A stretch of DNA of 64,000 nt from Mobula birostris (Eukaryota). Below are positions 820 to 34,278 of this stretch, one piece after another. Both the position numbers and the translations under genes were made by a program. The notes below the pieces were generated by a model, which saw only the letters and a program-made list of their open reading frames with translations, was not told the DNA's origin and made no database searches. The stretch lies in the NCBI RefSeq assembly GCF_030028105.1, contig NC_092371.1:15149884-15213883 (forward strand), given 5' to 3'. The stretch's first letter is position 1. Each line of letters begins with the position of its first letter.

Positions 820-3060
820 CTGATCCTGTGATGGGAACGGTGATTGGTAACGCCGGAAAATGGCTCGCCCCGTTTCGTTGTCCCCCCACCATAATTTCCT
901 CCATATACCTGTCTAGATGTCTCTTAAACTTCACTAGTGTATCTGCCTCCACCACTGACTCAGGCAGTGTATTCCACGCACCAGCCACTCTCTGAGTAAA
1001 AAACCTTCCTCTAATATCCCCCTTGAGCTTCCCACCACTTACCTTAAAGACATGTCCTCTTGTATTGAGCAGTGGTGCCCTGGGGAAGAGGCGCTGGTTA
1101 TCCACTCTATCTATTCCTCTTATTATCTTGTACACCTCTATCATGTCTCCTCTCATCCCCCTTCTCTCCAAAGAGTAAAGCCCTAGCTCTCTTAATCGCT
1201 GATCATAATGCATACTCTCTAAACTAGACAGCATCCTGGTAAATCTCTTTTGTACCCTTTCCAATGCTTCAACATTCTTCCTACAGTGAGGCGACCAGAA
1301 CTGGACACAATACTCCAAGTGTGGCCTAACCAGAGTTTTATAGAGCGGCATCATTACATCCCGACTCTTAAACTCTATCCCTGGACTTATGAAAGCTAAC
1401 ACCCCAAAAGCTTTCTTAACTAACCCATCCACCTGTGAGGCAACTTTCAGGGATCTGTGGGCATGTACCTCCAGATCCCTCTGCTCCTCCACACTACTAA
1501 GTATCCTTCCATTTACTTTGTACTCTGCCTTGGAGTTTGTCCTTCCAAAGTGTACCACCTCACACTTCTTCTGGTTGAACTCCATCTGCCACTACTCAGC
1601 GCACTTCTGCATCCTATCAATGTCTCTCTGCAATCTTTGACAATCCTCTACACTATCTACAACACCACCAACCTTTGTGTCGTCTGCAAACTTGCCAACC
1701 CACCCTTCTACCCCCACATCCAGGTCGTTAATATAAATCACGAAGAGTAGAGGAAGCAGAACAGATCCTTGTGGGACACCACTAGTCACAATCCTCAAAT
1801 CTGAATGTACTCCCTCCACCACCACCCTCTGCCTCCTGCAGACAAGCCAACTCGGGATCCACCTGGCCAAACTTCCCTGGATCCCATGTCTTCTGACTTT
1901 CTGAATAAGCCTACCTTGTGGAACCTTGTCAAATGCCTTACTAAAATCCATATAGTTTACATCCACTACCCTACCCTCATCTATATGCCTCGTCACCACC
2001 TCAAAGAACTCTATCAGGCTTGTTAGACACGATCTGCCCTTCACAAAGCCATGCTGACTGTCCCTGATCAGGCCATGATTCCCTAAATGCCTATAGATCC
2101 TATCTCTAAGAATCTTTTCCAACAGCTTTCCCACCACAGACGTAAGGCTCACTGGTCTATAATTACCCGGACTATCGCTACTACCTTTTTGAACAAGGGG
2201 ACAACATTCGCCTCCCTCCAATCTTCCGGTACCATTCCCGTGGACAACGAGGACATAATGATCCTAGCCAGAGGCTCAGCAATCGCTTCCCTCGCTTCGT
2301 GGAGCAGCCTGAGGAATATGCTGTCAGGCCCGGGGACTTACCCGTCCTAATGTATTTTAACAACTCCAACACCTCCTCTCGCTTAATAGCAACATGCTCC
2401 AAGCATCAACCTCACTCATATTGTCCTCATCATCATCAAGTTCCCTCTCATTGGTGAATACCGAAGGGAAGTATTCATTGAGGAACTCGCTCACTTCCAC
2501 AGCCTCCAGGCAAATCTTCTCACCTTTATCTCTAATCAGTCCTACCTTCACTCCTGTCATCCTTATTTTCTTCACATAATTGAAGAATGCCTTAGGGTTT
2601 TCCTTTACCTTACTCGCCAAGGCCTTCTCATGCCCCCTTCTTGCTCTTCTCAGCCCCTTCTTAAGCTCCTTTCTTGCTTCCCTATATTCCTCAATAGACC
2701 CATCTGATCCTTGCTTCCTAAACCTCATGTATGCTGCCTTCTTCCACCTGACTAGATTTTCCACCTCACTTGTCACCCATGGTTCCTTCACCCTACCATT
2801 CTTTATCTTCCTCACCGGGACAAATATATCACTAACATCCTGCAAGAGATCTCCAAACATCGACCACATGTCCATAGTACGTTTCCCTGCAAAAACATCA
2901 TCCCAATTCACACCCGCAAGTTCTAGCCTTATAGCCTCCTAATTTACCCTTCCCCAATTAAAATTTTTCCTGTCCTCTCTGATTCTATCCTTTTCCATGA
3001 TAATGCTAAAGGCCAGGGAGTGGTGGTCACTGTCCCGCAGATGCTCACCCACTGAGAGAT
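820..3060 (-). mobile_element. CR1 LINE, 5'-truncated, ORF2 (end of EN, RT, C-term) frameshifted
   Basis: ORFs 2357-2911, 1592-2221 (NYRPVSLTSVVGK, YMDFSKAFDKV, GVPQGSVL, FADDTK) and 740-1585 (RPHLEYCVQFWSP, RGRFFTQRV). Confidence 0.95.
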
Positions 3061-3083
3061 CTGTGAGATCTGAGAGATTTTAT

Positions 3084-3295
3084 TTTAAAATAACACACAG
3101 AACCGGAGTTGACCATTTAACCTTTTCCTCCCACTCCATCATCCAATATGATCAATGTGGACCTTTCCACTCAGTTCCGGTTTCCCTTACTGACCCACCG
3201 GCTCACTGAGTATCTAAACCCGTCTCAGTCATTGGAAACTCCCCGCCGGTCAGTGTGACGTTATCGCCAAAAGTCAAATTAATGTTATTGTCAAA
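3084..3295. promoter_or_regulatory. Second copy of the candidate IgL 3' enhancer, with no IgL exon next to it in the window
   Basis: Near-identical to 23702-23915; NF-kB site at 3234-3243 and IRF-Ets motif at 3175-3184 are intact. Confidence 0.5.
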
Positions 3296-5029
3296 GTACA
3301 GGTTTGTGACCATATATTACCTTGACTTTCACTTTGTTGCAGACATTTGAAGTTTAACAAAAATACTATATTCTATAGACTCAATAAAAACGCGCAAATA
3401 AATAAATACATAGGTAGTTGCATGGATAAATAGATAAATACATAGATAATACTGATGACAAGAGTTGTGGAGTTATTGAAATTGAGTCCATAGATTTTGG
3501 AATCAGTTCAGAGTTGTGGTTTTCGAAGTCATCCACACTGCTTCTGCAGTCTGATGTTTAAAGGGTAATAATTGTTCCTGAACCTGCTGATGTGGCGCTT
3601 AAGGCTTGTGTATTCATCACATGGAATAGACTTACTGACACGGGAAAGAGCATGAGATGACTAAAGAACCCGTTAGAACAAGTTAGATTCTGCCTGATTA
3701 ATAGAGTGGAGTTTTTGGGGATTGTGACTGAGAGGACGCGCTGTGGCTGACGGCTCCATGCACTCACAGAGAATTCAGACAGATTTCGCACAAGCCATTG
3801 ACTACGTGAATTCAGGGTATCTGTTATGGTTGCTTTGCAGATGGGAGCGAGAGAGGAGGAAAGATGGAACGGCAGCATGAATAAAGTAACACACAAAATG
3901 CTGGAGCAACTCAGTCAGTCAGGCAGCATCTATAGACCAAAATGCAGGAGGTAGCCTCGTGCTTCACAGGGATCTTCATAATGCCTGATGAAAACTACAT
4001 GGAAGAGGGCTGCTTCTCAGGATTCACTAAACCGTACATCTTACGATGCCCGAGAGAAGGAACAGAGGGGTAAAATTTCAAGTTTATAAAGATAAATAGT
4101 TTACGGGTTTCTTTGGAAGGAGAAGGAGTATCCAGCCAAGGTACGCAGTGATTATGAGCTGGTTGATGCTCCATAAATGCGTTTCTTTGGAGAGGGATGA
4201 GCGGTATTCCCAGTTGGATCCGGTCCCACTTCCACTGTGGCGATTATTGCACAGGTCTGACACCCGGAAAACATAGAAACCTGCAGACAAAAGAAGTTCT
4301 GCAAATACTGTAAATCCAGAATAACACACACAAAATCACAAAATACTGGAGGAACTTAGCAGGTCAGGCAGCTTCTGCGAAAGGGAATAAAGCGTTGCCT
4401 TTCCATGCCCAGTCTGCAGCGGAAACATTGTAAAAACTGTCAGTTAAATGTACCATATAATGAGAACGCACTGTACTGACCTCTTTCGTGGATGTCCAGA
4501 TATAAATTTATTTTCCACATCCGCACTGCCTCTGCATGTCAGCTGCAATTGCAATATGCAGACTAAATATTATGGTACACTGAACTAATAATGATACTGA
4601 GTATGAAAAGTTCAGATCTCGCTTTGGAAAGGTAAGCAGTATTGTGGTGTCGGTAGAATTCAACCGTTCACCAGAATACATTCATTAGGCAAGTTTCGAC
4701 AGTAAAAACAAGCGGAGTTCGCATTTCTTCAACACCTGTTACCCCTTCTTTTGATCCCCTACTGTCGGGCATTTTTAGCATTGGGCCAAGAACTGTTAGG
4801 ACGGGAATCAGCTGCCTCTCCCAAGCCGTGAGACTACTGAACTCCCTGCTACCACCCAGTGGTAATAACGTTAAACTGTTTACATTTTGATTTGTGTCCT
4901 AAATGCACCTGATACTAAATGTCACTTTTCTGGAAGCTATTTCATTATATGTTAATTTATTTGCGGTAATATTACTTCATGTGTTGTGTGTCAGCCTGTG
5001 CTCTATGTTGTGCACCGCTAGACATCCTT

Positions 5030-7110
5030 ACCTCTGCAAGCAAAGTGATATTGCCAGTAATTTTGCGCAGACTGAAACCACGGGCAGGAGAAATTATCGC
5101 TGAAGACCGGGCTCGCTTCAGAAGGGAAGACAAACTGGAGGAATGCGCAAAAACTTGGCAGATAGAATATAGTGTTGGGAAATGTATGATAATGCAATTT
5201 GGTAAAAGGAACAGTAGTCTGGACAATTATCTAAATGGAGAGACGGTTCAAACATCAGAGGTGCAAAGGGACTTACGCATCCTCGGGCAAGACTTCCAGA
5301 AATTTAATTAACAGATTGAGGCTTGGTAAAGAAGGTAAATGTAATGTTCGTATTTATTTCAAGGAGAATAGAATATAAAAGCAAGGAGATAATGCTGAAC
5401 CTTTATACGACAATAGTCACGCCGCATTTGGAGTATTGTCAACAGTTTTGGGCCCCATGTCTCTAAAAGGATGCGTTGTCATTGGAGAGAGTCCAGCGAA
5501 GGTTTACGATTATGATACCGAGAATGAAGGGGCTAACATATGAGGACTGTCTGGCAGCTTTAGGTCGATATTCACTGGAGTGTAGAAGAATGCGTGGACA
5601 TCTCATTGACACCTACCGAATGTTGAAAGGACTAGATACAGTGAATGTTTCCTATGGTGGGCGTATGCAGAACTAAAGGGCACAGCCTCTAAATTGAAGT
5701 GCGACATTTTAGAATAGAGGTAAGGAGGAATGCTTTAGCCGGAGTAGTGAATCTGTGGAATGCACTGTCACAGACTGCAGTGGAGGCCAAGTCCGTGGAT
5801 ATATTTAAGGCGTAATTCGATCGTTTCCTGATCGGTCAGGGCGAGAAGGATATGTCGAGAAAGCAGGTGCATGGGGTTGATTGGGAATTGGGATCTAGCA
5901 TGATGGAATGGCAGAGCACACTCGATGGACTGAATGGTCTAATTCTGCTCCTATACCTTATGGTCTTATGATCTAAGTACAACAGAACAGATATTCAATC
6001 TCCCAGTACTGTGCGACCATCAGGACATTTCCCATGTGTTCATACACTTCAAAAAGGCATTCGATAGGATATGGCATGTTGCACTGTGGGCTCCGATGAA
6101 GAGATACAACATGGGCCAAAAGCTGCTCCAAACCATCAAGCAGCTCCATTTCAAAGCTATCAGTACGGTACTTGTTCAAGACACAGTCGGACAGTGGTTC
6201 TAAACATCAGTTGGAGTTCAACAAGGCAGCCTCCTTTCACCCGATGTTCAACATTTCCCTGGAGCAAATAATGACAGATGCCCTGGAAGACCATATCGGC
6301 ACATTCAGCATCGGTAAACAGATTAGGCTCGCCGATAACATTCATGGGCCGATAGGAACTGAGGAGGAATTGGTCTGCCTTCTGATCGGTCTGCACGATA
6401 CGTCTAGCAGATAAGGCATGGAAATCTGGCTAAGAAAGCCAAACTGATGAGAAATAGTGAGGAGCCAAGCACGACAACAATCACAGTCAGTAGACTGTCA
6501 AACGGTTCAAGTATCTTGCTGCCATCACCAACCAAGAAGGATCAAAGTCTGAAGTCCTTGCAAGAAAAGCCCTAACAGCAGCAACGCTGGTTAAACTAAA
6601 ACCGATCTGGGAATACAATGATATCGCTCTCAGATCCAAGCTGAAACTCCTGCATGTGCTCTCCATCTTGTTCTATGCATGCGAATATGGACTTTGACAG
6701 CAGAACTGCAAAAGAAAACCCAGACAGTAGAAATGAGATGCTCCAAAAGGCTCCTCGGCATCTCCTATACAGACCATTGTCAGAAGACGAAGTATGAAGA
6801 ACCATCACTCAGCACATGAGACACTACGAATTTTGCCGTCCACGGTAAAGAAGAGGAAGCTGAGATGGCATGGTCACGGAAGAAGATCAAGAGGACTCTC
6901 AAAGACCATTCTTCAGGGAAAGGCGCGGGAGAAAAGGAAAAAGGGCAGGCAGAGGAAGAAATAGGCAGACAACATTTTAGAGTAGACAGGAACGACATTT
7001 GCTGCACCCCAGGCACTCGGCCACAACAGTGAGAGATGGAAGCAACTGGCGCAGCACTCATATGTTCTGTGCCCTTGCACCCCAAGCGGGCTGCGCGATC
7101 GGGAAACGGA
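5030..7110 (+). mobile_element. RTE-clade LINE, RT and 3' end, interrupted by a CR1
   Basis: Peptides ASKVILPVILRRLKPRAGEIIAED, HPMFNISLEQIMTDALEDH, LRSKLKLL, VKKRKLRWHGH, KTILQG; ends at gtgcccttgcaccccaagcgggctgcgcgatcggga. Confidence 0.85.
5130..5974 (+). mobile_element. CR1 3' fragment nested in the RTE
   Basis: DKLEECAKTWQIEYSVGKC, SLERVQRRFT; typical tail aattctgctcctatacc ttatggtctt. Confidence 0.9.
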
Positions 7111-8930
7111 ACAGTAACATCCGTTCATACTCTCACGGAATCCTTTCTGTTCTTCTGTAAATATGTTGTGGTTATTTAAGTGAGTGGTGATTAGTTGCGA
7201 GATGCATGATGTTACAATTTTATATAGAGATTGTAAAGAAGTAACACGACGACATTTTGATGAATCATTTGTGATTTCTCCCTTAGGTAAGAGATATGTT
7301 TTACATCCTGTCAAAAATTCAGTCACTTTTTCAGGACCTTTAAGAAAATTGCTGATATGTTTTAGTAAGTACGGATGAAGGCAAGTAAATTGTTAGAACA
7401 ATAATTATGAATATTATCACTGCCATTGCTTTTCAAGTTGTATTTTTATAATCACTTTTAGCACATCCATTGTAACTTCAGCTATTTGTATTTATTCATT
7501 TTTCCGACTGCATTCTTTTTTCTCCTCATCCAGCTTGCTTCTTGATTGTGCGTCACCATGTTTGCCCAGTTTTTAGACCAAAAGTTCATTATCTCTGTGT
7601 TTGGTGGGAATTCTGTGCTAGAGTATGTGACAAAAACCTTTTTCATTCTTTCTGAACTGGTAATTCTGTTTTCTTCATCTGGCGCATTTCATTTATCCAG
7701 CTAGTCTGTGCACCAAGTTTTTGTTTCAGTGTTCCTATGAATACTACAATGCTTTTATTTGATTGGCATTATCTTGTATGGACCTTATACCTCCTCAGTA
7801 AATGCAACTTTCTTGCTCGAGTTGAATTTGTTAATATTCCATTTGGCAGGCTAGTTCAGCTCTAAATTTTCGATTTTGTTTCTTAATCTCTATACCGTTT
7901 AGGTGTTCTCATTTCATTATTCAGTTTGTGGAGATCTATGAATGAGTGTCTCTATTTTGGAGCCATTGCACTGCACTGCTGTTACTGCTACACAGTCTGT
8001 TATTGGGTGCAGTTCTTCAAATGTTTCAAGTTAAGTATTCCTAAATATTGTTGTAATATAATATTGTTGAGAGTATAAACAACCTTTGCAAAATTTGGTG
8101 ACATATTTTGTTTCGGTATGCGGAGTCGTTTTGTTCGGTTAGTATCTATATATTCTGTTACTATGATGTTAAATATTTGGATAATTTTCTCTGTAAACAA
8201 CTTCGTCAACAGCATTCTGCGAAGGCTGTACACCTGTGTTATTGCTGTTTCTATCAGGTTCTGGAGCAAATGAAGTAATTGTATTTTCATCAACGCATCG
8301 ATGGATTGCATCTTCGTTACTTACTTGCATAATATTGCTATAGTCTTTAGATTAGTTTCTTCCTAGGTGTTGTGTAACTGCACGTTTTACTTGGTTTAAC
8401 ATATCTATAGGCATCAAGTTTATTTTTTCAACTAGGGCTCTACGCTGATCTGCTCTTCGTTGTACATTTACTTGCATGAAGGGATATTGTGCGATAAACT
8501 GCTGATGAAGTTTTTTCTTGTATGTTATCTTGCCGCCCTCAAGTTTCATTAATCGATAACCTATGCGCATTATGAATGTGTTTATGTATAATAACCATTT
8601 GCGTGTCTTTCTTCTCGTAACTGCTTGAGGGGATTCAGTTCTAGGTGGACTGTTCCATTCAGTAACACCTGCAACAGTCGCAGACTGTGGTGTTGGTGGG
8701 CTACTTTGAAAGCTGGCTGAATCTTTTTCGGTATTCCCGGTGCCTGACTGCCTATTATAAGTGCACCAGTAACGGTTTGCTTATTGCGCTTACTGTCACG
8801 CACAGCGCTAGCTTCAGGCATCCCCCAGCAATCCCCAAGAGGTGACTGCAGTATTCTATTTAGTGGACTTTTCTCCATTTCTAAAGTGAAAGGGTATTCC
8901 TTTTTATACCTACAGTCAGCAACTCCTGTA
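7110..8930 (-). mobile_element. R4/Dong-clade (RLE-type) non-LTR retrotransposon, 5' half through the start of RT, decayed
   Basis: TRRKTRKW..NTFIMRIGY..KKLHQQF..QRRADQRR (N-terminal region), RLRIPK, and TYLLPKGEITNDSSKCRRVTSLQSLYKIVTSCISQLITTHLNNHNIFTEEQKGF (RT domains 1-2). Confidence 0.8.
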
Positions 8931-9039
8931 TAGCCCTAATTGTTTAATGGTATTATGTAGTGTCTTTGGGATGACACCACCTGTACATATTACTATTGGG
9001 TCAATGTATACCCTGTTTCAATATCCTCTTTTAATTCAG

Positions 9040-19809: not shown

Positions 19810-20060
19810 CCACAACTAATGTTGTTTATTTATTTATCCATCCATCTATGAATTTACTTATGTATTTATTGTTTCTGCATCGTTTGTCTTCTTCCGCACA
19901 TCGGTTGTTTGTCCGTCTTCGTTTTGCGTATTTTAATATATTCCATGGTGTTTCTAAGTATCTACTGAGAATGCCCGCAGGAAATTGAATCTTAGGGTTG
20001 TATACGGTGACATACACATATTTTACAATTAACTTACTTTCAATTTTCCAATTTAAGATC
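19810..20060 (+). mobile_element. Rex1/L2-type LINE 3' UTR
   Basis: gaatgcccgcaggaaattgaatcttagggttgtatacggtgacatac...aattaacttactttcaatttt tail. Confidence 0.6.
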
Positions 20061-20350
20061 CCTAACTTTGGGTCGCGTTCTAATTCATAATGTATTGTAA
20101 TCAATCCAGTGGTTACTGTTTAATGGTCACCACTGCATGTTGATGGCGAAGGTATCGTCAAGATAAAGGAATGTTAGGTATTGTGGGGATTTAATAATTG
20201 TGGCTTTCAACGGTTTAGATCCTAATAACTATTGGGACAGAATCAATGGGGCCGACTGTTTTCTGTCGTTCCAGACAGCAGCTGCTGATATCGAAGTCTA
20301 AAATCAGTTTTAACTGAGTCTTTACAAACTTATACAGGATTGGATATGTG

Positions 20351-20358
20351 ATACAAAT
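20351..20358 (+). promoter_or_regulatory. Variant octamer ATACAAAT ~250 bp upstream of the IgL ATG
   Basis: One mismatch to ATGCAAAT; I saw no perfect octamer in the proximal promoter. Confidence 0.25.
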
Positions 20359-20599
20359 TAAGCTGAAACATTTTAGGAGTGAAAAGTTAAGGTTTTAAAG
20401 ATAAGTGATTTCGCCATTCCCGGAGTCCAACTGTCGGGCGTTCTGCTCCTCCCCATCCTTTTCCTGCCGCCTCCCACTCATTAATATCCCCGTTAATAAA
20501 CAGACCTGGAGCCATCGGTTTGCAGAAGCTGCAGCCGGAGCCTCCCTGTGTTTGTATAACAGTGAGCGATTCGGTCGAAACTTCGCTTCGTCCGGAGAA

Positions 20600-20648
20600 A
20601 TGTCCCGAGTGCTGCCTCTCCTGTGGGCTTTACTGGTCCATTTATCAG
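20600..20648 (+). CDS. IgL: IgL leader exon (L-part1)
   Basis: ATG at 20600, hydrophobic MSRVLPLLWALLVHLS, strong donor G|GTGAGT at 20649; 120-nt intron ends at cacag 20768. Confidence 0.92.
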
Positions 20649-22738
20649 GTGAGTGTCTCATTGCTCAAAAATTGCGATTGCCGCTGATTTTCTAGCGCGT
20701 ATTAAACAATTGGTGGGACTTCCGTTGGCGCCAAGACACCCAAGTAGTTTTATTGTGTTTCATCACAGGTATCCTAGCGGTCCCAGTCCTCAATCAGACA
20801 CCAATGTCCGGTCCTGTCTCTGCGGGGTACACCGCCCGCTTAGAGTATCAGATGCGGAACGGAAATATTGCAAGTTACTACATGCTCTGGTATCGACAGC
20901 GTCCCGGGGAGAGACCGGAGTCGGTGATTCTGCACGATCCAGAGGATGATGATCCTACAAACCGAGGGCCTGGGATCACAAGCCGTTTCCAGCCGTCCGG
21001 AGACCTGTCCAACAACATTCACATCCTGACCATCGGCAACTTGGATCCCCGGGGCTCCGCTGTCTATTACTGTGCAGTGTGGGATGATGAATATATCTTC
21101 GGTCCAGGCATTATCCTGGATGTAAAGAGTAAGTGACTCGCTCATTCCTTTACAAGCAATTCCCATCATAGTCCCTCCTATTTTCCACATCTGTGGAAAT
21201 ATCCATGCAGGAAATAATCGTACCATCTCTATGCCGCGGCAGAGCTTTACCTGTCTCGAATAGGGATAGGAGACCATTCGGTCCCTCAATTTCATGACCC
21301 TTTTACACGAGGTACATACCGACATTCGGAAACTCCTGTTAAGGTGGTGGATGCCCAGATCGATCAAGCATTTTCTCTCCTTTAACACTGAACCCAGGTC
21401 CAGTATTGTCGGAATCGGAACTAGTCTTACCCAATCCCCAAGATTTGGTTACAAAACTTTCCCCAATATTCAGAACTGCTATAAATGGCAGCCAACGCGT
21501 TCAGAGTTGTCCGCCTCAGGTTCAAACTGTTAACCAGGGCACGAACAAGCAAGGAACACTGCAGATATTTTAAGGTACATTGCAGAAAAATGCTGGGCAG
21601 CTAGCGGACTGGACAGAGAATAGAGCGGGAACGGATGGGTTTGCACGTGTCCAGGAGGTAATCCCGGTCTGACCTGGACTCTTCTTGCTTCCTCGCCTCT
21701 CTTCTGCTCACGGGACCGATCTTCTTTTTCGCCATTTCCTCTGCTATCATTTGGCAAGAAGGTTTGGACATCCTGAAGTACTCAATATCCGGGTGGAGGG
21801 GGAGTCATCGATATCTGGGGAGTCACCGGAATTCAATCGCTCGGCTTAGGAGCCAGTGACAAGGTAGCACCGGATTTGTTGATAATAGTTTGGTCCGGAT
21901 TTAGGGTAATTGTTTTTCAGAATCGGGAAAGGAATTGGAATCTGGAGATGACAGTAGGTTAGAAATTTAGAGTTTGTGGCGCTCCTTCACAGAGCTGAAA
22001 GAGTAATATCCATCAATTCACAGCCCTGTTATAGATCTTAAGAACTATTGGGGTCAGGCTAAAACACGAATCCACAGTGATACCAATAACCGGGCAGAGC
22101 CATGTGCAGGAATTGGAGGATGGAATAAATGAGGCTCCTTACTCATCTCTGGTGGGCGCCAGATTCCCCGCCCGGGAAGACAATGGAAGTTAAAGTCCAT
22201 TTAGGATTTGTGATTAATCTGGAAAAATCCGCACTGCCGCTTCATTCCCCGAAAGAAGAACCGCAAACTCCGCCACCTATTTCATTGTTTGTCTCCATAC
22301 TTGGTAGCTTCTAATTATTTTCTGGCGAGTTTTTTTTTTTTTGCCCGAGCTCTGGGAGTCCACAAATTAATATTGTCTCTATTTCGTCCATCTCGTTTCT
22401 CACACACAGGTAGCGAGTCCCGGAGGCCCTTGGTTCTCCTGCTCCCTCCCTCCGCAGTAGAGACCGGCTCCGGTTCTGCTACTCTGTCCTGCATGGTGAG
22501 CGGCTTTAAACCGGGCTTGGTAGAGCTTCGCTGGAGTGTGGATAACGTCGAGACGGAGAACGGGGTGACCACAGGCACCGTGTCACCGGATACCGACCAG
22601 ACCTACAGGCTGAGCAGCTACCTGCGGGTACCCGCCGCTGCCTGGAAAAAAGGTTCCAGTTATTCGTGCACCGTGAGCCACAGCCCGCTGAGCTCGCCTC
22701 TGCGCAACACCATCTCTTCGTCGTCCTGCTCGCGGTGA
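20600..22738 (+). CDS. IgL: Immunoglobulin light chain gene, germline-joined L-VJ-C cluster, sigma-cart/type I (NS5)-like; join(20600..20648,20769..21128,22410..22738), 245 aa
   Basis: Three exons with canonical GT-AG phase-1 introns splice into a stop-free 738-nt ORF: leader MSRVLPLLWALLVHLSGILA, V domain VPVLNQTP...WYRQRPG...YYC, J motif FGPG, C1 domain ending SSCSR*. The class is inferred from the FR1 start, long CDR2 and C-region start resembling shark NS5/skate type I (recalled, not searched). Confidence 0.93.
20769..21128 (+). CDS. IgL: IgL fused V-J exon
   Basis: GILAVPVLNQTPMSGPVSAGYTARLEYQMRNGNIASYYMLWYRQRPGERPESVILHDPEDDDPTNRGPGITSRFQPSGDLSNNIHILTIGNLDPRGSAVYYCAVWDDEYIFGPGIILDVK; donor A|GTAAGT at 21129; no RSS or spacer between V and J. 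Confidence 0.95.
22410..22738 (+). CDS. IgL: IgL constant exon (C1-set)
   Basis: Acceptor tttctcacacacag|GT. Translation SESRRPLVLLLPPS...TLSCMVSGF...LRWSVD...YRLSSYL...W...YSCTVSH...SSCSR*. Both intradomain Cys, the core Trp and the C-terminal interchain Cys are present. Confidence 0.96.
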
Positions 22739-23700
22739 GGCCGCGCCGGATGACAGCACACGTGAATTGTTTGCCCTCATTGGGTCTGTGTAGCCGCGTT
22801 GTGCAGGTTAATTGTGCCTTAATATCCGCTTCTGGGAACAAACAGATGTTCAGTTATTTCAGAAATGAGCGCGATGATTGTCCGATTTTTGTGACGCGTA
22901 ATTCTCAGTAGAATTGTATCCACTGTGCTGAGTCTGATTTCCGTTGTGTGTAGAATGGAGAGAGCTCCCTTTGACTATGTTATAATTAGATCTTGTTCAT
23001 CACAACTCTTAGTAAAGATGCAACTACTGGTTGGTTTCACATGGTCTGTCTTTACTCGCAGTACGTTGGGAGTTTGTTGGCGAATAACGTGCCATCTGCC
23101 TGCCGAGTCACACAGAATTACACTCAAATCCACCAAAATATGGTATTCTGCCATTCCTGACCGAAGCCGATTTCTGTGTCCTACCGTAGCCTCTTCCGTC
23201 TTTGTTAACTTCCCACAATCACTGGGAACTTATTTTCTTCGTCGCCCTGCACCTCTGCTCTTCATTTCTTCCTATCCCTGTGGGAGGGAGCTCGATATTC
23301 TCACTATATTTTGTCCAAATTCTGGCCACGGGTGTTAAGCTGTTGATAGACACGCTGCAAGGTTGTTTACTCATGATGTAGTCATTCTCTACACTTGAAG
23401 TTATCTATTCTCTTAGTTCCACCACAAAGACCAAACGATCTTCTTGTACGCCCCGAGACCAAGCCAAACGCCTCCCGCCCCTCCCATGCCGCCGGCACAC
23501 ACACGCCCACACAGACATATAACCTCCCAGGAAACTCAGCAAATTACCTTCTGTAACTTCTGAGTATCTAAATGTCGAGCTGTTCCAATCCTGGAGAAAT
23601 TATCTGCTCCATTTCCTATCTGTCACCCCTTGGACACGTTATCCGAGCCCGTACACAAATCCACCGCACGGGAGTGTTTTAAAGGACCGGGCAACCGAAC

Positions 23701-25640
23701 ATTTTAAAATAACACACAGAACCGGAGTTGACCATTCAACCTTTTCCTCCCACTCCATCATCCAATATGATCAATGTGGACCTTTCCACTCAGTTCCGGT
23801 TTCCCTTACTGACCCACCGGCTCACTGAGTATCTAAATCCGTCTCAGTCATTGGAAACTCCCCGCCGGTCAGTGTGACGTTATCGCCAAAAGTCAAATTA
23901 ATGTTATTATCAAAGTACAGATATGTGACCATATATTACCTTGACATTCACTTTGTTGCGGACAATTGGAGATTAACAAAAATACTATATACTATAGAAT
24001 CAATGAAAACCCGCAAATAAATAAATACATAGGTAGCTGCATGGATAAACAGATAGATAGATAGATAATACGGATGACAAGATTTGTAGAGTTATTGAAA
24101 TTGAGTCCTTAGGTTTTGCAATCAGTTCAGATTTGTGGTTTTCGAAGTCATCCACACTGCTTCTGCAGTCTGATGTTTAAAGGGTAATAACTGTTCCTGA
24201 ACCTGCTGCGGTGGAGTTTAAGGCTCGTGTATTTATCAGACTGGAGAGAATTACTGAACCGGGAAAGAGCATGAGATGACTAAAGAACCCGTGTGCATAT
24301 ATTCAAGTTAGATTCTGCCTGAATAATAGAGTGAAGTTAATGGGAAATGTGACTGAGAAGACGCGCTGTTAGTGACGGCTCCATGCACTCACTGGGAATT
24401 CAGACAGATTTAGCTCAAACTATGAATTGAGGGAATCTGTTAGGGCTGCTTTGAAGATGGGATCGATAGAGCGGGAAAGATGGAACGGCACCACGAATAA
24501 AGTAACACAAAAAATGCTGGAGGAACTCAATAACTCAGGCAGCATCTATAGAACAAACTGCAGGAGGTAGCGTGGTGCTTCACGGGGATCTTCATAATGC
24601 CTCACGAAAACTACATAGAAGAGGGCTGCTCCCCAGGGTTCCGTACGCCGTACAACTTACGATGTCCAAGGGAAGGAACAGAGGGGTAAAATTCCAAGTT
24701 TATAAACAGATAAATAGTTTACGGGTTTCTTTGGAAGGAGAAGGAGGCGCCAACCAAGGTACGCAGTGATTGTGAGCTAGCTGATGCTCCATAAATGTGT
24801 TTCACTGGAGAGAGCTGAGCGCTATTCCCAGTTGGATCCGGTCCCGCTTCCACTGTGGCGATTATTGCACAAGTCTGACACCCGGACAACGTAGAAACCG
24901 CAGACAAAAGAAATTCTGCAAATACTGGAAATCCAGATAACAGGCACAAAATCACAAAATGCCTGAGGAACTTAGCAGGTCAGGCAGCTTCTGCGAAAAG
25001 GAATAAAGAGTTGACTTTCCATGCCCAATCTGCAGTAGAAACAGTGTAAAACAGTCAGTTAAATGCACCATATAATGAGAACGCACCATATAGACCACTT
25101 CCGTGGATGTCCAGATATAAATTTATTTTCCATATCCGCACTGCCTTTGCATGTCACCTGCAATGGCAATTTGCAAACTAAATACTATGGTACACTGAAC
25201 TAATATTGATACTGAGTATAAAAAGTTCAGATCTCACATTGGAAAGGTAAGCAGTATTGTGGTGGTGATAGAATTCAGCCATTCAACCAGAATACAGACA
25301 GTAGGCAAGGTCCGACCGTGAAAACAAGCGGAGTTCGCATTTCTTCGACGCCCGTTTCCCCTTCTTTTGATCCCCTACCTTCGGGCAGTTTTAGCATTGG
25401 GACAATCACTTTCAGGACGGGAAGCAGCTTCCTCCCTAATCTGTGAGACTACTGAATTCCCTGCCACAATCCAGATTTCATCACTTATGAAGTGCTAATA
25501 ACGTTAAACTGTTTGCTTTTTGACTTGTGCCGTAAATGCAGCTGTTACTAAATGTCAGTCTTCTGGAAAATATTTCATTATTTGTTAATTTATTTGTGGT
25601 AATAGTATTTCATATGCTGTGTGTCTCTTCTATGCTCTAT
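23701..25640 (+). repeat. Segmental duplication copy 2, part a
   Basis: Aligns by eye to 3082-~5008 (e.g. aaaataacacacagaaccggagttgaccatt; gctggaggaactc; cagttggatccggtccc). Confidence 0.9.
23702..23915. promoter_or_regulatory. Candidate IgL 3' enhancer (conserved non-coding block)
   Basis: About 1 kb after the C stop. About 3 differences in ~210 bp from its paralog at 3084-3295. Contains GGGAGTTTCC (NF-kB consensus, minus strand, 23853-23862), GAAACCGGAA (IRF-Ets composite, minus strand, 23794-23803) and TGACGT (23875-23880). Confidence 0.55.
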
Positions 25641-25840
25641 GACAGAAATATCTGTCCGTCAAGCCTGCTCCGCCATTTCATCCTGTCAGATCCATTTCCG
25701 TTTCAGCCCCAGAATCCTGCCTTCGCCTCGTATCCCTTTAAGAGCCTAGCAACCTCGGTATTAAATAAACTAAATGACAGCCTCCAAAGCCGCCTGCTGC
25801 AACGAAATCCACAGATTCATCACTCTCTTCTTAAAGAAAT

Positions 25841-27082
25841 TGTTATAAGGGGGGCGTTTGTGGCGGATCCAAATGCAAGATACAGACACTGAAGTACTAG
25901 GAACAGGACTGGGTGTGTCAAGAAAGCAAGGGAAGTGAGGAGGAAACGACGCTGGACAAGACACAGGCCCTGGACGAGACTAAGATACAGGACCTGTGCT
26001 AGGAATAGACTAGGAAAGCGGGACCTGGACGAAGAACTAGGAAGTTGGAACCTGGACAAGGACTCCGAGCCAGAGACTAGACAGGGACCTAGAACCTGGA
26101 TCTTGACTCGGGCTCGGATTCCGGATCTAGGCGAGGACAAGACATGGAGAGGCAACAGTCCTGGTCGTGGCGGCAGGACGCAGGACTCCTGGGCAGGAGG
26201 CGGGACCAGAACTGGATGACGACACGAAGCTCAGACTTGGTCTTGGGAGACAGGAACGCAGAACACAGAGCCTTGGTCTTGGGAGACAAGAACGCAGAAC
26301 ACGGAGCATTGGTCTTGGGAGACAAGAACGCAGAACACGGAGCATTGGTCTTGGGAGACAGAAACTCAGAACGCAGAGCCTTGGCCTTGGGAGACAGGAA
26401 CGCAGAACACGGCGCGTTGGTCCTGGGAGACAGGAACGTAGAACACAGAGCCTTGGTCTCGGGAGACAGGAACGCAGAACACAGAGCCGGGACCCCTCCT
26501 TGGGAACAGGTCGTAGGGCCGGGACACATACACACGACGAGACGGTTCCCAACACAAGGTAGGGGCAAACAGCCGGAAGTACCTAACGAAGACGTGGACA
26601 CAGAGACGGTTCCCAACACAAGGTAGCGGCAAACGGCCGGACCTATCTAGCGAAGACATGGACACAGAGACGGTTCCCAACACAAGGTAGCGGCAAACGG
26701 CCGGACCTACCTAGCGAAGGCGAAGACACAAAGAGACAGTTCCAAACAGTTCCTTATCTAGACACAGTAAGGCTCCGGTCTTGCTCCGGCGGTAGAACTT
26801 GACGGCGAGAATAGGCGAGGCTTCAGGCTAAAGATAGCAGGCGAGGCTTCAGGCTGAAGGTAGCAGGCGAGGTTTCAGGTAAGGGCTACAAAAGGAAGGG
26901 GAAGGGAACAGTCCAGCAACTGAAGCTGAACCCAGGAGTTGTTTATGTAGCCAGCCCAAAATGAGAATCATGTGCCTCAATTAAGGCACCAACTGAACAA
27001 GGAAAAACCGGAAAACCTGGAATAAGGATCGATGGACTGGTCCGTGAACCGGAATGCGGACTTCACGGACTGGACCCTGACA
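25841..27082 (-). mobile_element. Solo LTR (1242 bp) with internal 36-bp and ~64-bp tandem arrays
   Basis: TGTTA...TGACA termini; 5-bp TSD gaaat/gtaat (1 mismatch); 7 x 36-bp units (26230-26490) and ~4 x 64-66-bp units (26540-26760). Orientation inferred from the TATA-like ctacataaac on the minus strand. Confidence 0.8.
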
Positions 27083-30145: not shown

Positions 30146-32063
30146 TCTCAGCTGAACTTAAGGTTCGTTTAAGAAATTGCTGCTTTTGACTCCCAATACC
30201 GACCATTTTACTGCCAAACGTACAGTCTTTGGTGAACAAAATTGAATATCTTGGAGCTCGGGTGCTGTATCAGAGGTACATTAGGACCGCTTGCGTCTTT
30301 TGGTTCAGGGAATCTTGGTTAAGCACATCCGTGTCCGGACGCAGCAATTCAGATTGCTGGGTTCACAATACACAGCCAAGACAGGTCGGCTGAGTCTTTC
30401 AAAAACAGAGGTGGAGGAGTCTGCTTTCCGATCAACTCCTCGTGGTGTACAACTGTGGCGGAGAGGCCCTAGTTCGGTTCACCAGACCTGGAACACCTCG
30501 CGATCAACTGCCTTCCTTTTTAATGTGCCGCAGAGCATTATTTTGTTCTCGTACATCCCACCAGGGGCCAAATTCAAGCAATATCTGAATAAACTGACTG
30601 ATGTGACCAACAGCCACGGAACAGCACATGCTGATGCCTTCCCCGTCAAACCCGGTGCCGAAGAAGAGCAAGGTGGCATGCCTGAATGACTATCGACCTG
30701 TGGCTCTGACATCAATTGCTATGAAGTGATTCGAGCGATTGGTTATGGCAGACATCAACCACAGCCTACCGGTCAACCTCGACGCTTTGCAATTCGCCTG
30801 TCGGAGCAACAGGTCAACTGGTCAACAGGTCTCTCTGGCCCTACATTCCTCCTTAGAACACCTGGAGAATAAAGACGCATACGTAAGGCTCCTTTTCATT
30901 GACTACAGCTCTGCCTTTAATACCATCATTCCAAATAAACTGATTCCTAATCTCCAGAACCTGGGCCTTAGCACTCAGATCTGCAGCTGGATCTTCAACT
31001 TCCTCACAGACAGGACCAAGGCTGTAAAAATAGGGGACAAGTTCTCCTCTACAATCACTCTGAGCACCGGTGCCCCACAAGGCTGTGTACTCAGCCCCCT
31101 GCTGTACTCACTGTACACCCATGATTGTGTAGCCAAGTTTCCATCGAATTCAATATATAAGTTTGCTGATGACACCACAGTTGTAGGCCGTATCTCGGGT
31201 AATGATGAGTTTGAGTACAGAGAGGAAATTAAGAACCTGGTGGCATGGTGCAAAGACAATAACCTATCCCTCAATGTCAGCAAGATGAAGGAATTGGTTG
31301 TTGACTTCAGAAGGAGCAGCGGACCGCACGACCTCATTTACATCGGTGGTGCGCAGGTGGAACAGGTCAAAAGCTTTAAGTTCCTCGGGGTCAATGTCAC
31401 AAATGACCTGACTTGGTCCAACCAAGCAGAATCCACTGTCAAGAAGGCCCACCAGCGTCTTTACTTCTTGAGGAAGCTAAGGAAATTTGGCCTGTCCCAT
31501 AAAACCCCCACTAATTTTTATAGATGCACCGTAGAAAGCATTCTTCTAGGGTGCATCACAACCTGGTATGGAGGTTGTCCTGTTCAAGACAGGAAGAAGC
31601 TGCAGAAGATCGTGATCACAGCGCAGCACATCAAACAAACCGCTCTTTCATCCCTGGACCCACTTTACACCGCATGCTGTCGGAGCAGTGCTGTCAGGAT
31701 AATCAAGGACACGACCCACCCAGCTAACACACTTTTAATCCCTCTTCCCTCCGGGAGAAGGCTCTGGAGCTCGAAGACCCGTGCGGCCAGATTTGGGAAC
31801 AGCTTCTTTCCAACTGTGATAAGACTGCTGAACGAATCCTGACCTGGATCTGGGCCATACCCTCCAAATATCCGGACCTACCTCTCGATTTTTTTGCACT
31901 ACCTTACTTTCCCTTTTCTATTTATGATTTATAACTTAAATTTTTAATATTTACTATCTATTTGTACTCCAGGGAGCACGAACAGCAGAATCAAATATCG
32001 CTGTGATGATTGGAGGCTCGAGCATCAATCGTTTGGTGACAATAAAGTGTAAAGTATGAAGTA
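30145..32063 (+). mobile_element. Rex1/Babar LINE: EN remnant, internal deletion, open 367-aa RT ORF (30739-31842) and 3' tail
   Basis: [56 protein letters not shown]; tail aataaagtgtaaagtatgaagt. Confidence 0.92.
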
Positions 32064-33069: not shown

Positions 33070-34278
33070 TGTCATAAGGGAGCGCTGAAGGGCGGACCCA
33101 AATGCAAGACACAGACACTGAAGTTCTAAGAATACGACCAGGTGTATCGAGATAGCAAGGTGAGTGGGGAAGCAACGACGCTGGACATTGACACAGACTA
33201 GAATTCAGGGTCTGGGCTAGGACTTGGGCTAGAAAAGCGGGACAAGGACAAGGAACTTCGAACTAGGAGCCTGGGCTTGGACTTCGAGCCAGAAACTGGA
33301 CAGGGACCCGGTACCTGGGTCTTGACTCGGGATCGGACCCCGGATCTAGACGAAGACGAGACGTGGCTACAGGGCTGGACGTGGCTAGGCTACAAAACAG
33401 GACGTGAGACTCCTCGACAGGGCAAGGGAACTCCAGCACCAGACGGGGGAACTCCAGGACTGGGCAAGGTAACTCCTGGGCTGGGCGAGGCACATGGACA
33501 GGACGAGAACACGAAGCCTTGACTTGGTCTTGGGAGACAGGAACCTCGGAGCCTTGGACTTGGAACTCAGGAACCTCGGAGCTTTGGACTTGGAACTCAG
33601 GAACCTCGGAGCCTTGGACTTGGAACTCAGGAACCTCGGAGCCTTGGACTTGGAACTCAGGAACCTCGGACCCTTGGTCCCGAGCACGGGAAACACGGAG
33701 CCTTGGACTTGAACACAGGAACATGGAACACAGAGCTGGGACCCCTCCTTCGGACCGGAACTCTTTCTATACAGAGAACACTGAACACGAAGAAACAGTT
33801 CTCCACTCAGAGTAGCGGCAAACGGCCGGACCTACCCAGCGGAGGCGAGGACACAAAAGACGGTTCCTAACACAAGGTAGCAGCAAACGGCCGAACCTAC
33901 CTAGCGAAGCCGAGGACACAAAGAGACAATTCCAAACAATGGTAGTCCGTTCCTTATCTTGACACAGCATGGCCCGGTCTTGCTCTGGTGGTTGAACCTG
34001 ACGGCGTTGCAGGCGAGGACGCAGGCAAAGGTTGCAGGCGAGGCTTCAGGCGAAGGCTGCAGGCAAGGCTTCAGGCAAGGCGTCAGAAGGAATTGGAAGG
34101 GAACAGTCCAGCAAGTGAAGCTGAACCCAGGAGTTATTTATGTAGCCAGTCCAAAACGGGAATCAGGTGCCGCAATTGAGGCACCCCAACAGAGCAAGGG
34201 AAAACCGGAAAACCTGGAATAAGGATCGATGGACCGGATAGTGAACCGGAATTCGGACTTCAAGACCGGACCATGACA
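33070..34278 (-). mobile_element. Solo LTR (1209 bp), same family as 25841-27082, with a 30-bp tandem array
   Basis: TGTCA...TGACA termini; TSD gctgg/tctgg (1 mismatch); splits a Penelope tail (aaaatctgcagatgctgg|ggatccaaatcaac); 4-5 x ttggacttggaactcaggaacctcggagcc (33520-33680). Confidence 0.82.

What the first reader, a model, noticed from the sequence alone, without database searches (positions are those of the whole stretch)
20769..21128. Intact IgL ORF whose V domain lacks the canonical Cys23 and the tyrosine-corner Asp
Seen: the codon at 20846-20848 is TAT (Tyr) at mature position 23, where V domains have the first Cys of the intradomain disulfide. The second Cys (YYC) is retained, so it is unpaired. 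The motif normally read as D-x-A-x-Y-Y-C is G-S-A-V-Y-Y-C (GGC, one base from GAC), and the J reads FGPGI rather than FGxGT. Yet the leader, all splice sites, the frame and the whole C domain (including the H-L Cys) are intact. Known: the B-F strand disulfide is almost invariant in Ig V domains. Inference: this is either a young in-frame pseudogene or an expressed, non-canonical invariant light chain (surrogate-like or with a free thiol).
Basis: partly seen in the sequence, partly recalled or inferred. Interest (0 to 1): 0.75.

Follow-up and report, generated by a model that had tools for sequence, protein, structure and literature searches.

The report
Manta antibody light-chain gene, recently crippled
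This giant manta ray antibody light-chain gene still reads through, but it recently lost two residues that every known relative keeps for folding, and I found no transcript of it, so it is most likely a young, still-open dead gene rather than a new kind of antibody chain.

Summary
The window holds one germline-joined type I (sigma-2, sigma-cart) light-chain cluster of Mobula birostris. It is identical to NCBI model XP_072132533.1.

- **The changes:** mature position 23 is Tyr (TAT, 20846-20848). The Asp before YYC is Gly (GGC, 21053-21055). The J reads FGPGI.
- **Not an assembly error:** independent contigs of the same animal match with no differences.
- **Recent changes:** two related species read TGT (Cys) and GAC (Asp) at these sites.
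- **Conservation:** Cys23, Asp82 and the Arg of the PSRD motif are invariant in 48 of 48 other family members. This gene has lost all three.
- **Faster change:** its V domain carries 17-20 lineage-specific changes, against 2-3 in the M. hypostoma relative.
- **Expression:** three RNA-like runs of the species hold none of its V words. One of them holds spliced transcripts of paralogs.
- **Open frame:** this is expected for a loss this recent.

Best reading: a young, missense-disabled gene, IMGT class "ORF" (confidence 0.6). An expressed disulfide-less invariant chain is not excluded (about 0.12), because the RNA evidence is thin.

Earlier notes of this scan report decaying germline-joined sigma light-chain genes elsewhere in this genome. 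I did not check those notes.

The parts
20440..20599 (+). Promoter and 5' UTR. Sequence blocks are shared with a skate type I cluster: a TATA-like CTCATTAATATCCCCGTTAATAAA at 20477-20500, GGTTTGCAGAAG at 20517-20528, and CCGGAGAA just before the ATG.
   Evidence: Alignment with Amblyraja radiata locus L001. Neither the manta nor the skate has a canonical ATTTGCAT octamer.
20600..20648 (+). Leader exon (MSRVLPLLWALLVHLS + first base of Gly), with a GT donor at 20649.
   Evidence: The CDS equals P0001.
20769..21128 (+). Germline-joined VJ exon. V and J are continuous, with no recombination signal sequences. AG acceptor at 20767-20768, GT donor at 21129.
   Evidence: Pfam V-set 41.1 bits.
20846..20848 (+). 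TAT = Tyr in place of the first V-domain Cys (mature position 23, precursor residue 43).
   Evidence: The same-animal contig agrees. Organisms B and D read G at 20847, which gives TGT (Cys). Cys is 48/48 in the other family members.
20999..21001 (+). GGA = Gly94 in place of the family-invariant Arg of the P-S-R-D motif.
   Evidence: Arg 48/48 in the others.
21053..21055 (+). GGC = Gly112 in place of the invariant Asp (Kabat 82) before A-V-Y-Y-C.
   Evidence: Organisms B and D, and paralog contigs of the same animal, read A at 21054, which gives GAC. Asp is 48/48.
21110..21112 (+). ATT = Ile131 in place of the J-region Thr (F-G-P-G-T).
   Evidence: Thr 46/48.
22410..22738 (+). C exon: a C1-set domain with Cys164/Cys223, the C-terminal Cys243 for the H-L bond, and the stop codon.
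   Evidence: AG acceptor, CDS equals P0001. (C1-set 77.9 bits, the same as its relative P0002). (family score within the normal range).
23011..23016 (+). AGTAAA at the place where two skate clusters have the AATAAA polyadenylation signal. It may be a weakened signal.
   Evidence: 3' UTR alignment. There is no AATAAA or ATTAAA within 1277 nt of the stop. I could not test whether Mobula paralogs share this.

Best explanation
This is one cluster of the multi-copy, germline-joined type I (sigma-2, formerly sigma-cart or NS5) immunoglobulin light-chain family of the giant manta ray. It worked until recently and is now drifting out of use. In the manta lineage it took missense changes at residues that hold the V fold together: Cys23 to Tyr (which removes the intradomain disulfide), Asp82 to Gly, the Arg of P-S-R-D to Gly, and the J Thr to Ile. 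The frame, splice sites, promoter blocks and C domain have not yet been hit. In IMGT terms it is an 'ORF' gene: open, but with changed conserved residues expected to spoil folding. Shown: the changes are real, derived and unique in the family; the lineage is accelerated; no transcript was found. Inferred: the protein folds poorly or is not made, and the loss is tolerated because many paralogous clusters cover the function.
For: - **Identity.** The CDS equals XP_072132533.1 of M. birostris. Its nearest named relatives are type I light chains of skate and horn shark. Type I genes are all germline-joined in skates.
- **The changes are real.** Contigs from a run of the same animal match with 0 differences over 19987-20926 and 20897-23900.
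- **The changes are recent.** Organism B (about 3.5% diverged in introns and flanks) and organism D (about 7.5%) both read G at 20847 (Cys) and A at 21054 (Asp).
- **Invariant residues are lost.** Cys23, Arg94 and Asp112 are 48/48 in the other members. This gene has lost 3 of the 13 V positions that are invariant in the others. That rate is about the same as its overall framework divergence (0.17-0.22), as expected without constraint.
- **The lineage is accelerated.** In the V domain, 17-20 changes are unique to this gene against 2-3 in the M. hypostoma relative (p = 0.003 and 0.0001). In the C domain the counts are 6-9 against 2. The end branch is 0.29 against 0.065.
- **Family scores drop in V only.** Pfam V-set is 41.1 bits against 57.6 for P0002, while C1-set is 77.9 against 77.8. 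A leave-one-out family HMM gives V 172.9 against a mean of 201 with sd 15, and a normal C score.
- **No transcript was found.** None of 32 sampled words of the VJ exon occurs in three RNA-like runs of the species. In run X21 no contig is 99% or more alike. The same run holds a spliced J-to-C contig of a paralog that joins exactly at the 22410 acceptor (depth 43.6), and paralog FR2/CDR2 contigs at depth 58-156. Only the genome carries the exact protein.
- **An open frame is no argument for function.** It is expected with probability about 0.23-0.43 after 1-1.75% neutral divergence.
- **The poly(A) signal position reads AGTAAA**, where the skate has AATAAA.
Against: - **Much of the gene is intact.** The frame, all four splice sites, the promoter blocks and the 3' UTR are still alignable with a skate cluster. 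The H-L Cys is kept.
- **CDRs changed more than frameworks** (0.44 against 0.17 versus P0002), as in working genes. So part of the long branch was probably travelled under selection.
- **The V change may be too large for drift.** If P0002 is the true ortholog, the V divergence is larger than neutral drift since that split would give. Neither relative's reads match P0002, so orthology is unsettled.
- **The coding changes I could place on the manta branch are few:** 4 replacement and 2-3 silent. That is too few to measure selection.
- **The RNA evidence is thin.** There are three small runs of unknown tissue and stage, held as contigs that drop rare variants. A germline-joined sigma-2 chain of the nurse shark is expressed mainly in neonates.
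- **A natural, working antibody that lacks a conserved V cysteine exists** (ABPC48).
- **Only one animal was seen.**
Confidence: 0.6

Rival explanations
1. The gene is expressed and used. It would be an invariant, germline-encoded light chain whose V domain folds without the B-F disulfide and carries a buried free Cys. It might be restricted to a stage or tissue, for instance embryos or neonates, and might pair with a particular heavy chain.
For: The frame, splice sites, promoter blocks, 3' UTR and C domain with the H-L Cys are intact. CDRs changed more than frameworks. In the nurse shark a germline-joined sigma-2 chain is the preferred partner of the neonatal IgM1gj heavy chain. The antibody ABPC48 works without a conserved V cysteine. 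AlphaFold still draws an Ig fold.
Against: Cys23 and Asp82 were lost only after the split from the closest relative sampled, so there is no long-standing conserved variant. Three 48/48-invariant fold residues and the J Thr are all hit, and the C domain also carries 5 departures at conserved sites. No transcript was found where paralogs are transcribed. The V-set score is 16 bits lower than for the relative.
Confidence: 0.12
2. Tyr23 and Gly82 are a segregating null or weak allele carried by this animal. They would not be fixed in the species, and the locus would still work in other mantas.
For: Only one animal's DNA was available. Runs X1-X4 are one sample, and the only other DNA run of the species is tiny. 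The changes are young.
Against: A single 940-nt contig runs through 20847 with no alternative letter (0 of depth 8.1). This argues for a homozygous state. Several separate changes have accumulated on the same branch, not one.
Confidence: 0.2
3. The Tyr codon is an assembly or sequencing error in an ordinary working gene.
For: None found.
Against: Contigs built from a separate run of the same sample agree over the whole gene with 0 differences. The oddities are several, not one base.
Confidence: 0.02

Closest known systems
Germline-joined type I (sigma-2 / sigma-cart / NS5) light-chain clusters of skates (Raja/Leucoraja erinacea; Anderson et al. 1995, PMC2192082)
   Same: Same isotype by nearest named relatives and by tree. 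Same leader, fused VJ and C cluster layout with no recombination signals. Promoter and 3' UTR are alignable with a skate cluster.
   Different: The skate genes are described as expressed. Every family member I aligned keeps the canonical V residues. This copy lacks Cys23, Asp82, the P-S-R-D Arg and the J Thr, and was not seen in RNA.
IMGT functionality class 'ORF' (open frame, but conserved amino acids changed so that folding is doubted; PMC2880031)
   Same: There is no stop or frameshift and the splice sites are intact, but the first conserved Cys is replaced.
   Different: The class was written for unrearranged V, D and J genes of translocon loci. Here it is applied to a germline-joined cluster gene. 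It is a label, not a demonstrated loss of function.
Nurse shark germline-joined sigma-2 (NS5) light chain that pairs with neonatal IgM1gj (review PMC5192425)
   Same: Same isotype, germline-joined, and therefore an invariant V region.
   Different: I found no report that the nurse shark chain lacks canonical fold residues. Its use is shown by expression, and no expression was found here.
Mouse antibody ABPC48, whose VH naturally lacks a conserved cysteine (cited in PMC5734687)
   Same: A V domain without the intradomain disulfide that occurs in nature. From my own recollection, the replacement there is also Cys to Tyr.
   Different: That is a heavy-chain V of one myeloma antibody, with the second Cys lost. 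Here a germline light-chain gene has lost the first Cys and further fold residues as well.

Membership tests
Type I / sigma-2 (sigma-cart) immunoglobulin light chain | Leader + V-set domain + C1-set domain, about 240-250 aa | tested here: met
   Pfam V-set 41.1 bits and C1-set 77.9 bits, both above their cut-offs. The protein is 245 aa.
Type I / sigma-2 (sigma-cart) immunoglobulin light chain | Closest relatives are type I chains; it groups inside the family | tested here: met
   The C domain is 77% identical to 'type I immunoglobulin light chain' of Leucoraja erinacea and 68-69% to Heterodontus chains. It sits in a 100/99-supported clade with Mobula hypostoma and Hemitrygon akajei chains.
Type I / sigma-2 (sigma-cart) immunoglobulin light chain | In batoids: V and J fused in the germline | tested here: met
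   One continuous exon 20769-21128 runs from FR1 to the J splice donor. The rule for skates is given.
Type I / sigma-2 (sigma-cart) immunoglobulin light chain | C-terminal Cys for the bond to the heavy chain | tested here: met
   Cys243 is present. This column is conserved in 90% or more of the family.
Functional Ig V domain (canonical) | Cys23-Cys88 disulfide, Trp35, Asp82, and J motif F-G-x-G-T | tested here: not met
   Tyr replaces Cys23, Gly replaces Asp82, and Ile replaces the J Thr. Trp35 and Cys88 are kept.
IMGT 'ORF' class | Open frame with intact splice sites, but changed conserved residues expected to disturb folding | tested here: met
.
IMGT 'pseudogene' class | Stop codon or frameshift in the coding region | tested here: not met
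   The 245-codon frame is open through all three exons.
Surrogate light chain (VpreB / lambda5-like) | V-like and C-like parts on separate proteins with unique non-Ig tails | tested here: not met
   This is one ordinary VJ-C chain with no extra tail. The review states that no VpreB or lambda5 is known in fish.
Surrogate light chain (VpreB / lambda5-like) | Expression in B-cell precursors, paired with nascent heavy chain | not testable with these tools
   No transcript was found in three RNA-like runs. Their tissue and stage are unknown.

The most novel reading that the evidence does not exclude
The manta ray uses this gene as an invariant, germline-encoded light chain whose V domain folds without the canonical disulfide and keeps a free buried thiol. 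It would be expressed only at a stage or site not sampled here, such as embryo or neonate, by analogy with the nurse shark germline-joined sigma-2 chain that partners IgM1gj.
Probability: 0.1. Interest if true: 0.6.

Novelty: new member of a known kind. Interest (0 to 1): 0.2.

Why it matters
It matters little beyond annotation. It is a dated example of how a member of a large antibody gene family dies by missense hits at fold residues before any stop codon appears. NCBI lists it as an ordinary protein-coding "lambda-1 light chain-like" gene, when it is a type I (sigma-2) gene that probably no longer works. Counts of functional light-chain genes in rays should flag such copies. It would become interesting for antibody folding and for early-life immunity in cartilaginous fish only if the gene turned out to be expressed.

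Tried and rejected
- **Codon-level dN/dS was not possible.** The look-up of encoding contigs returned no DNA for the M. hypostoma relative, an M. birostris paralog or a Hemitrygon relative, because the files were too large. The single read-laying run lists only 40 of 294 differences.
- **A protein search with the V-exon ORF alone found nothing**. By the tool's length rule, this blank says nothing.
- **Counting departures from family-conserved columns does not single the gene out.** It has 6 in V, against up to 7 in others. What is unusual is which residues are hit.
- **The framework-versus-CDR comparison with a control pair was not significant** (p = 0.25 and 0.12).
- **The octamer search was uninformative.** No canonical ATTTGCAT occurs in the manta gene or in the skate cluster.
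- **AlphaFold2 gave weak evidence only.** With the same 49-row family alignment it gave mean pLDDT 77.6 for this chain and 85.7 for the M. hypostoma relative, lower in both domains. The method is not a stability test.
- **P0002 as the strict ortholog is doubtful.** Reads of organisms B and D match the window's V exon better than P0002 does. One example is position 20960.
- **The duplicated 3' flank starts at 23701,** beyond the 3' UTR, so it could not serve as a paralog control for the AGTAAA site.

Full report
**What is there.** The window holds a single immunoglobulin light-chain cluster. A tblastn search with its own V and C domains finds no second copy in the 64 kb.
- The leader is 20600-20648, the VJ exon is 20769-21128 and the C exon is 22410-22738.
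- Joined at GT/AG sites, they translate exactly to a 245-residue protein.
- NCBI lists that protein as XP_072132533.1, "immunoglobulin lambda-1 light chain-like", of Mobula birostris, the giant manta ray.
- V and J are one continuous exon, so the gene is germline-joined.
- The automatic name is loose. The nearest named relatives are type I light chains of the little skate and the horn shark.
- Type I is the same isotype as sigma-2, formerly sigma-cart or NS5. It is reported to be joined in all skate genes.

**The observation.**
- The codon at 20846-20848 is TAT, giving Tyr at mature position 23.
- The codon at 21053-21055 is GGC, giving Gly in G-S-A-V-Y-Y-C.
- The J reads F-G-P-G-I.
- Trp35, the second Cys, the C1-set domain and the C-terminal Cys are intact.
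- In an alignment with 48 other family members from rays, skates and sharks, Cys23, that Arg and Asp82 are each 48/48. The J Thr is 46/48.

**Is it an error?** No. Contigs from a separate run of the same animal cover 19987-20926 and 20897-23900 with no differences. No alternative letter is seen at 20847. The unbroken contig through the site argues for a homozygous state. Only this one animal could be examined.

**When did it happen?** Two other organisms hold the orthologous stretch.
- Organism B differs by about 3.5% in introns and flanks, and organism D by about 7.5%. These figures come from the listed contig pieces.
- Both read G at 20847 (TGT, Cys) and A at 21054 (GAC, Asp).
- Organism B shares the window's Asn at 20960, while D keeps the ancestral Tyr. 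So the branching order is D, then B, then the manta.
- The loss of Cys23 and Asp82 is therefore younger than the split from the closest relative sampled.
- The coding changes I could place on that last branch are C43Y, S107N, D112G and S229P, plus two or three silent changes. That is too few to estimate selection.
- The read laying tables show only 40 of 294 differences.

**Rate and pattern.** The gene belongs to a 100/99-supported clade with one M. hypostoma chain and two Hemitrygon akajei chains. All share a CDR2 that is two residues longer.

| Measure | This gene (P0001) | Comparison |
|---|---|---|
| End branch length | 0.29 | 0.065 (M. hypostoma chain) |
| Changes unique to the lineage, V domain | 17-20 | 2-3 (p = 0.003 and 0.0001) |
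| Changes unique to the lineage, C domain | 6-9 | 2 (not significant) |
| Pfam V-set score (bits) | 41.1 | 57.6 |
| Pfam C1-set score (bits) | 77.9 | 77.8 |
| Leave-one-out family HMM, V | 172.9 | mean 201, sd 15 |
| Leave-one-out family HMM, C | 201.0 | mean 205.6, sd 8.6 |

- The relative-rate tests used the Hemitrygon chains as outgroup.
- Three of the 13 V positions that are invariant in all other members are changed here. That share is about the same as the gene's overall framework divergence (0.17-0.22). This is what absence of constraint predicts.
- CDRs still changed more than frameworks (0.44 against 0.17). So part of the long branch was probably travelled while the gene was in use.
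- Neither B nor D matches the M. hypostoma protein in the V exon. That protein may be a paralog, and the length of time covered by the long branch is uncertain.

**Expression.**
- None of 32 sampled words of the VJ exon occurs in three RNA-like runs labelled with the species.
- In run X21, from the same sample as the genome, no contig is 99% or more alike.
- Yet X21 holds a contig that joins a paralog's J to the C exon exactly at the 22410 acceptor (depth 43.6). It also holds paralog FR2/CDR2 contigs at depth 58-156.
- So the run does contain spliced type I light-chain messages, but not from this gene.
- The exact protein is recorded only from the genome.
- This evidence is thin. The runs are small, their tissue and stage are unknown, and contigs drop rare variants.

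**What is still intact.** Promoter blocks and the whole 3' UTR align with a cluster of the thorny skate. The skate's AATAAA, 285 nt after the stop, aligns to AGTAAA at 23011-23016. There is no canonical signal for 1277 nt. This may be a further weakening, but I could not compare Mobula paralogs. An open frame is no argument for function here. After 1-1.75% neutral divergence, a 735-nt frame stays free of stops and frameshifts with probability about 0.23-0.43. That estimate assumes an indel rate.

**Mechanism.** From established knowledge of Ig V domains, the B-F disulfide and the Arg61-Asp82 salt bridge are major contributors to stability. A bulky Tyr in the core, combined with loss of Asp82 and of the J Thr, should weaken folding strongly. 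Disulfide-free V domains can fold if they are otherwise very stable, and a natural antibody lacking a conserved V cysteine exists. So loss of function is inferred, not shown. AlphaFold draws an Ig fold for both this chain and its relative. Confidence is lower for this one (77.6 against 85.7). That is weak evidence.

**Verdict.** The most likely reading (0.6) is a recently disabled member of a multi-copy family undergoing birth-and-death turnover. In IMGT terms it is an "ORF".
- It may be a segregating allele (about 0.2).
- An expressed disulfide-less invariant chain remains possible (about 0.1). The nurse shark's neonatal germline-joined sigma-2 chain is the precedent that keeps this reading alive.
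- An assembly error is excluded for practical purposes.
- Earlier notes of this scan describe dead or decaying germline-joined sigma light-chain genes elsewhere in this genome. I did not test them and they are context only.

Noticed in passing
window 23701-25641 and 3082-5007: The 3' flank of the cluster is duplicated about 20.6 kb upstream at 87.8% identity over 1954 nt. No V or C exon lies beside the upstream copy. This is a trace of an older cluster duplication or a partial deletion.
   Followed up: partly
window 23011-23016: AGTAAA stands where two skate type I clusters have AATAAA. The whole 3' UTR is otherwise alignable between manta and skate, which is striking conservation for a UTR.
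   Followed up: partly
window 26236-26748: Two adjoining tandem arrays: 36-nt units x 7 and 64-nt units x 3.2, at 88-89% matches. They lie about 3.5 kb downstream of the C exon, and related copies lie near 33091-34278.
   Followed up: no
window 1592-2221 (-) and 30739-31842 (+): Reverse-transcriptase ORF fragments (Pfam RVT_1, E 5e-24 and 1e-24). These are retroelement remains flanking the cluster.
   Followed up: partly
window 19900-20033: A very high-copy repeat. Summed contig depth is 6000-9000 in the DNA runs of three species, against about 8 for the neighbouring single-copy DNA.
   Followed up: no
protein P0029 (another M. birostris type I light chain, not in this window): It also shows high framework divergence from its closest M. 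hypostoma relative (17/82) and carries extra Cys residues in FR1 and CDR1. It may be another copy drifting out of use.
   Followed up: no
run X21 laid on window 21117 / 22410: The tool labels this run 'RNA? (probably DNA)'. It nevertheless holds a contig spliced exactly at the C-exon acceptor, so it contains cDNA-derived sequence.
   Followed up: partly
protein P0002 (M. hypostoma) versus reads of organisms B and D: The best annotated M. hypostoma relative is only 75% identical in V. The reads of two related species are much closer to the window. Either the true M. hypostoma ortholog is unannotated or lost, or neither organism is M. hypostoma.
   Followed up: partly
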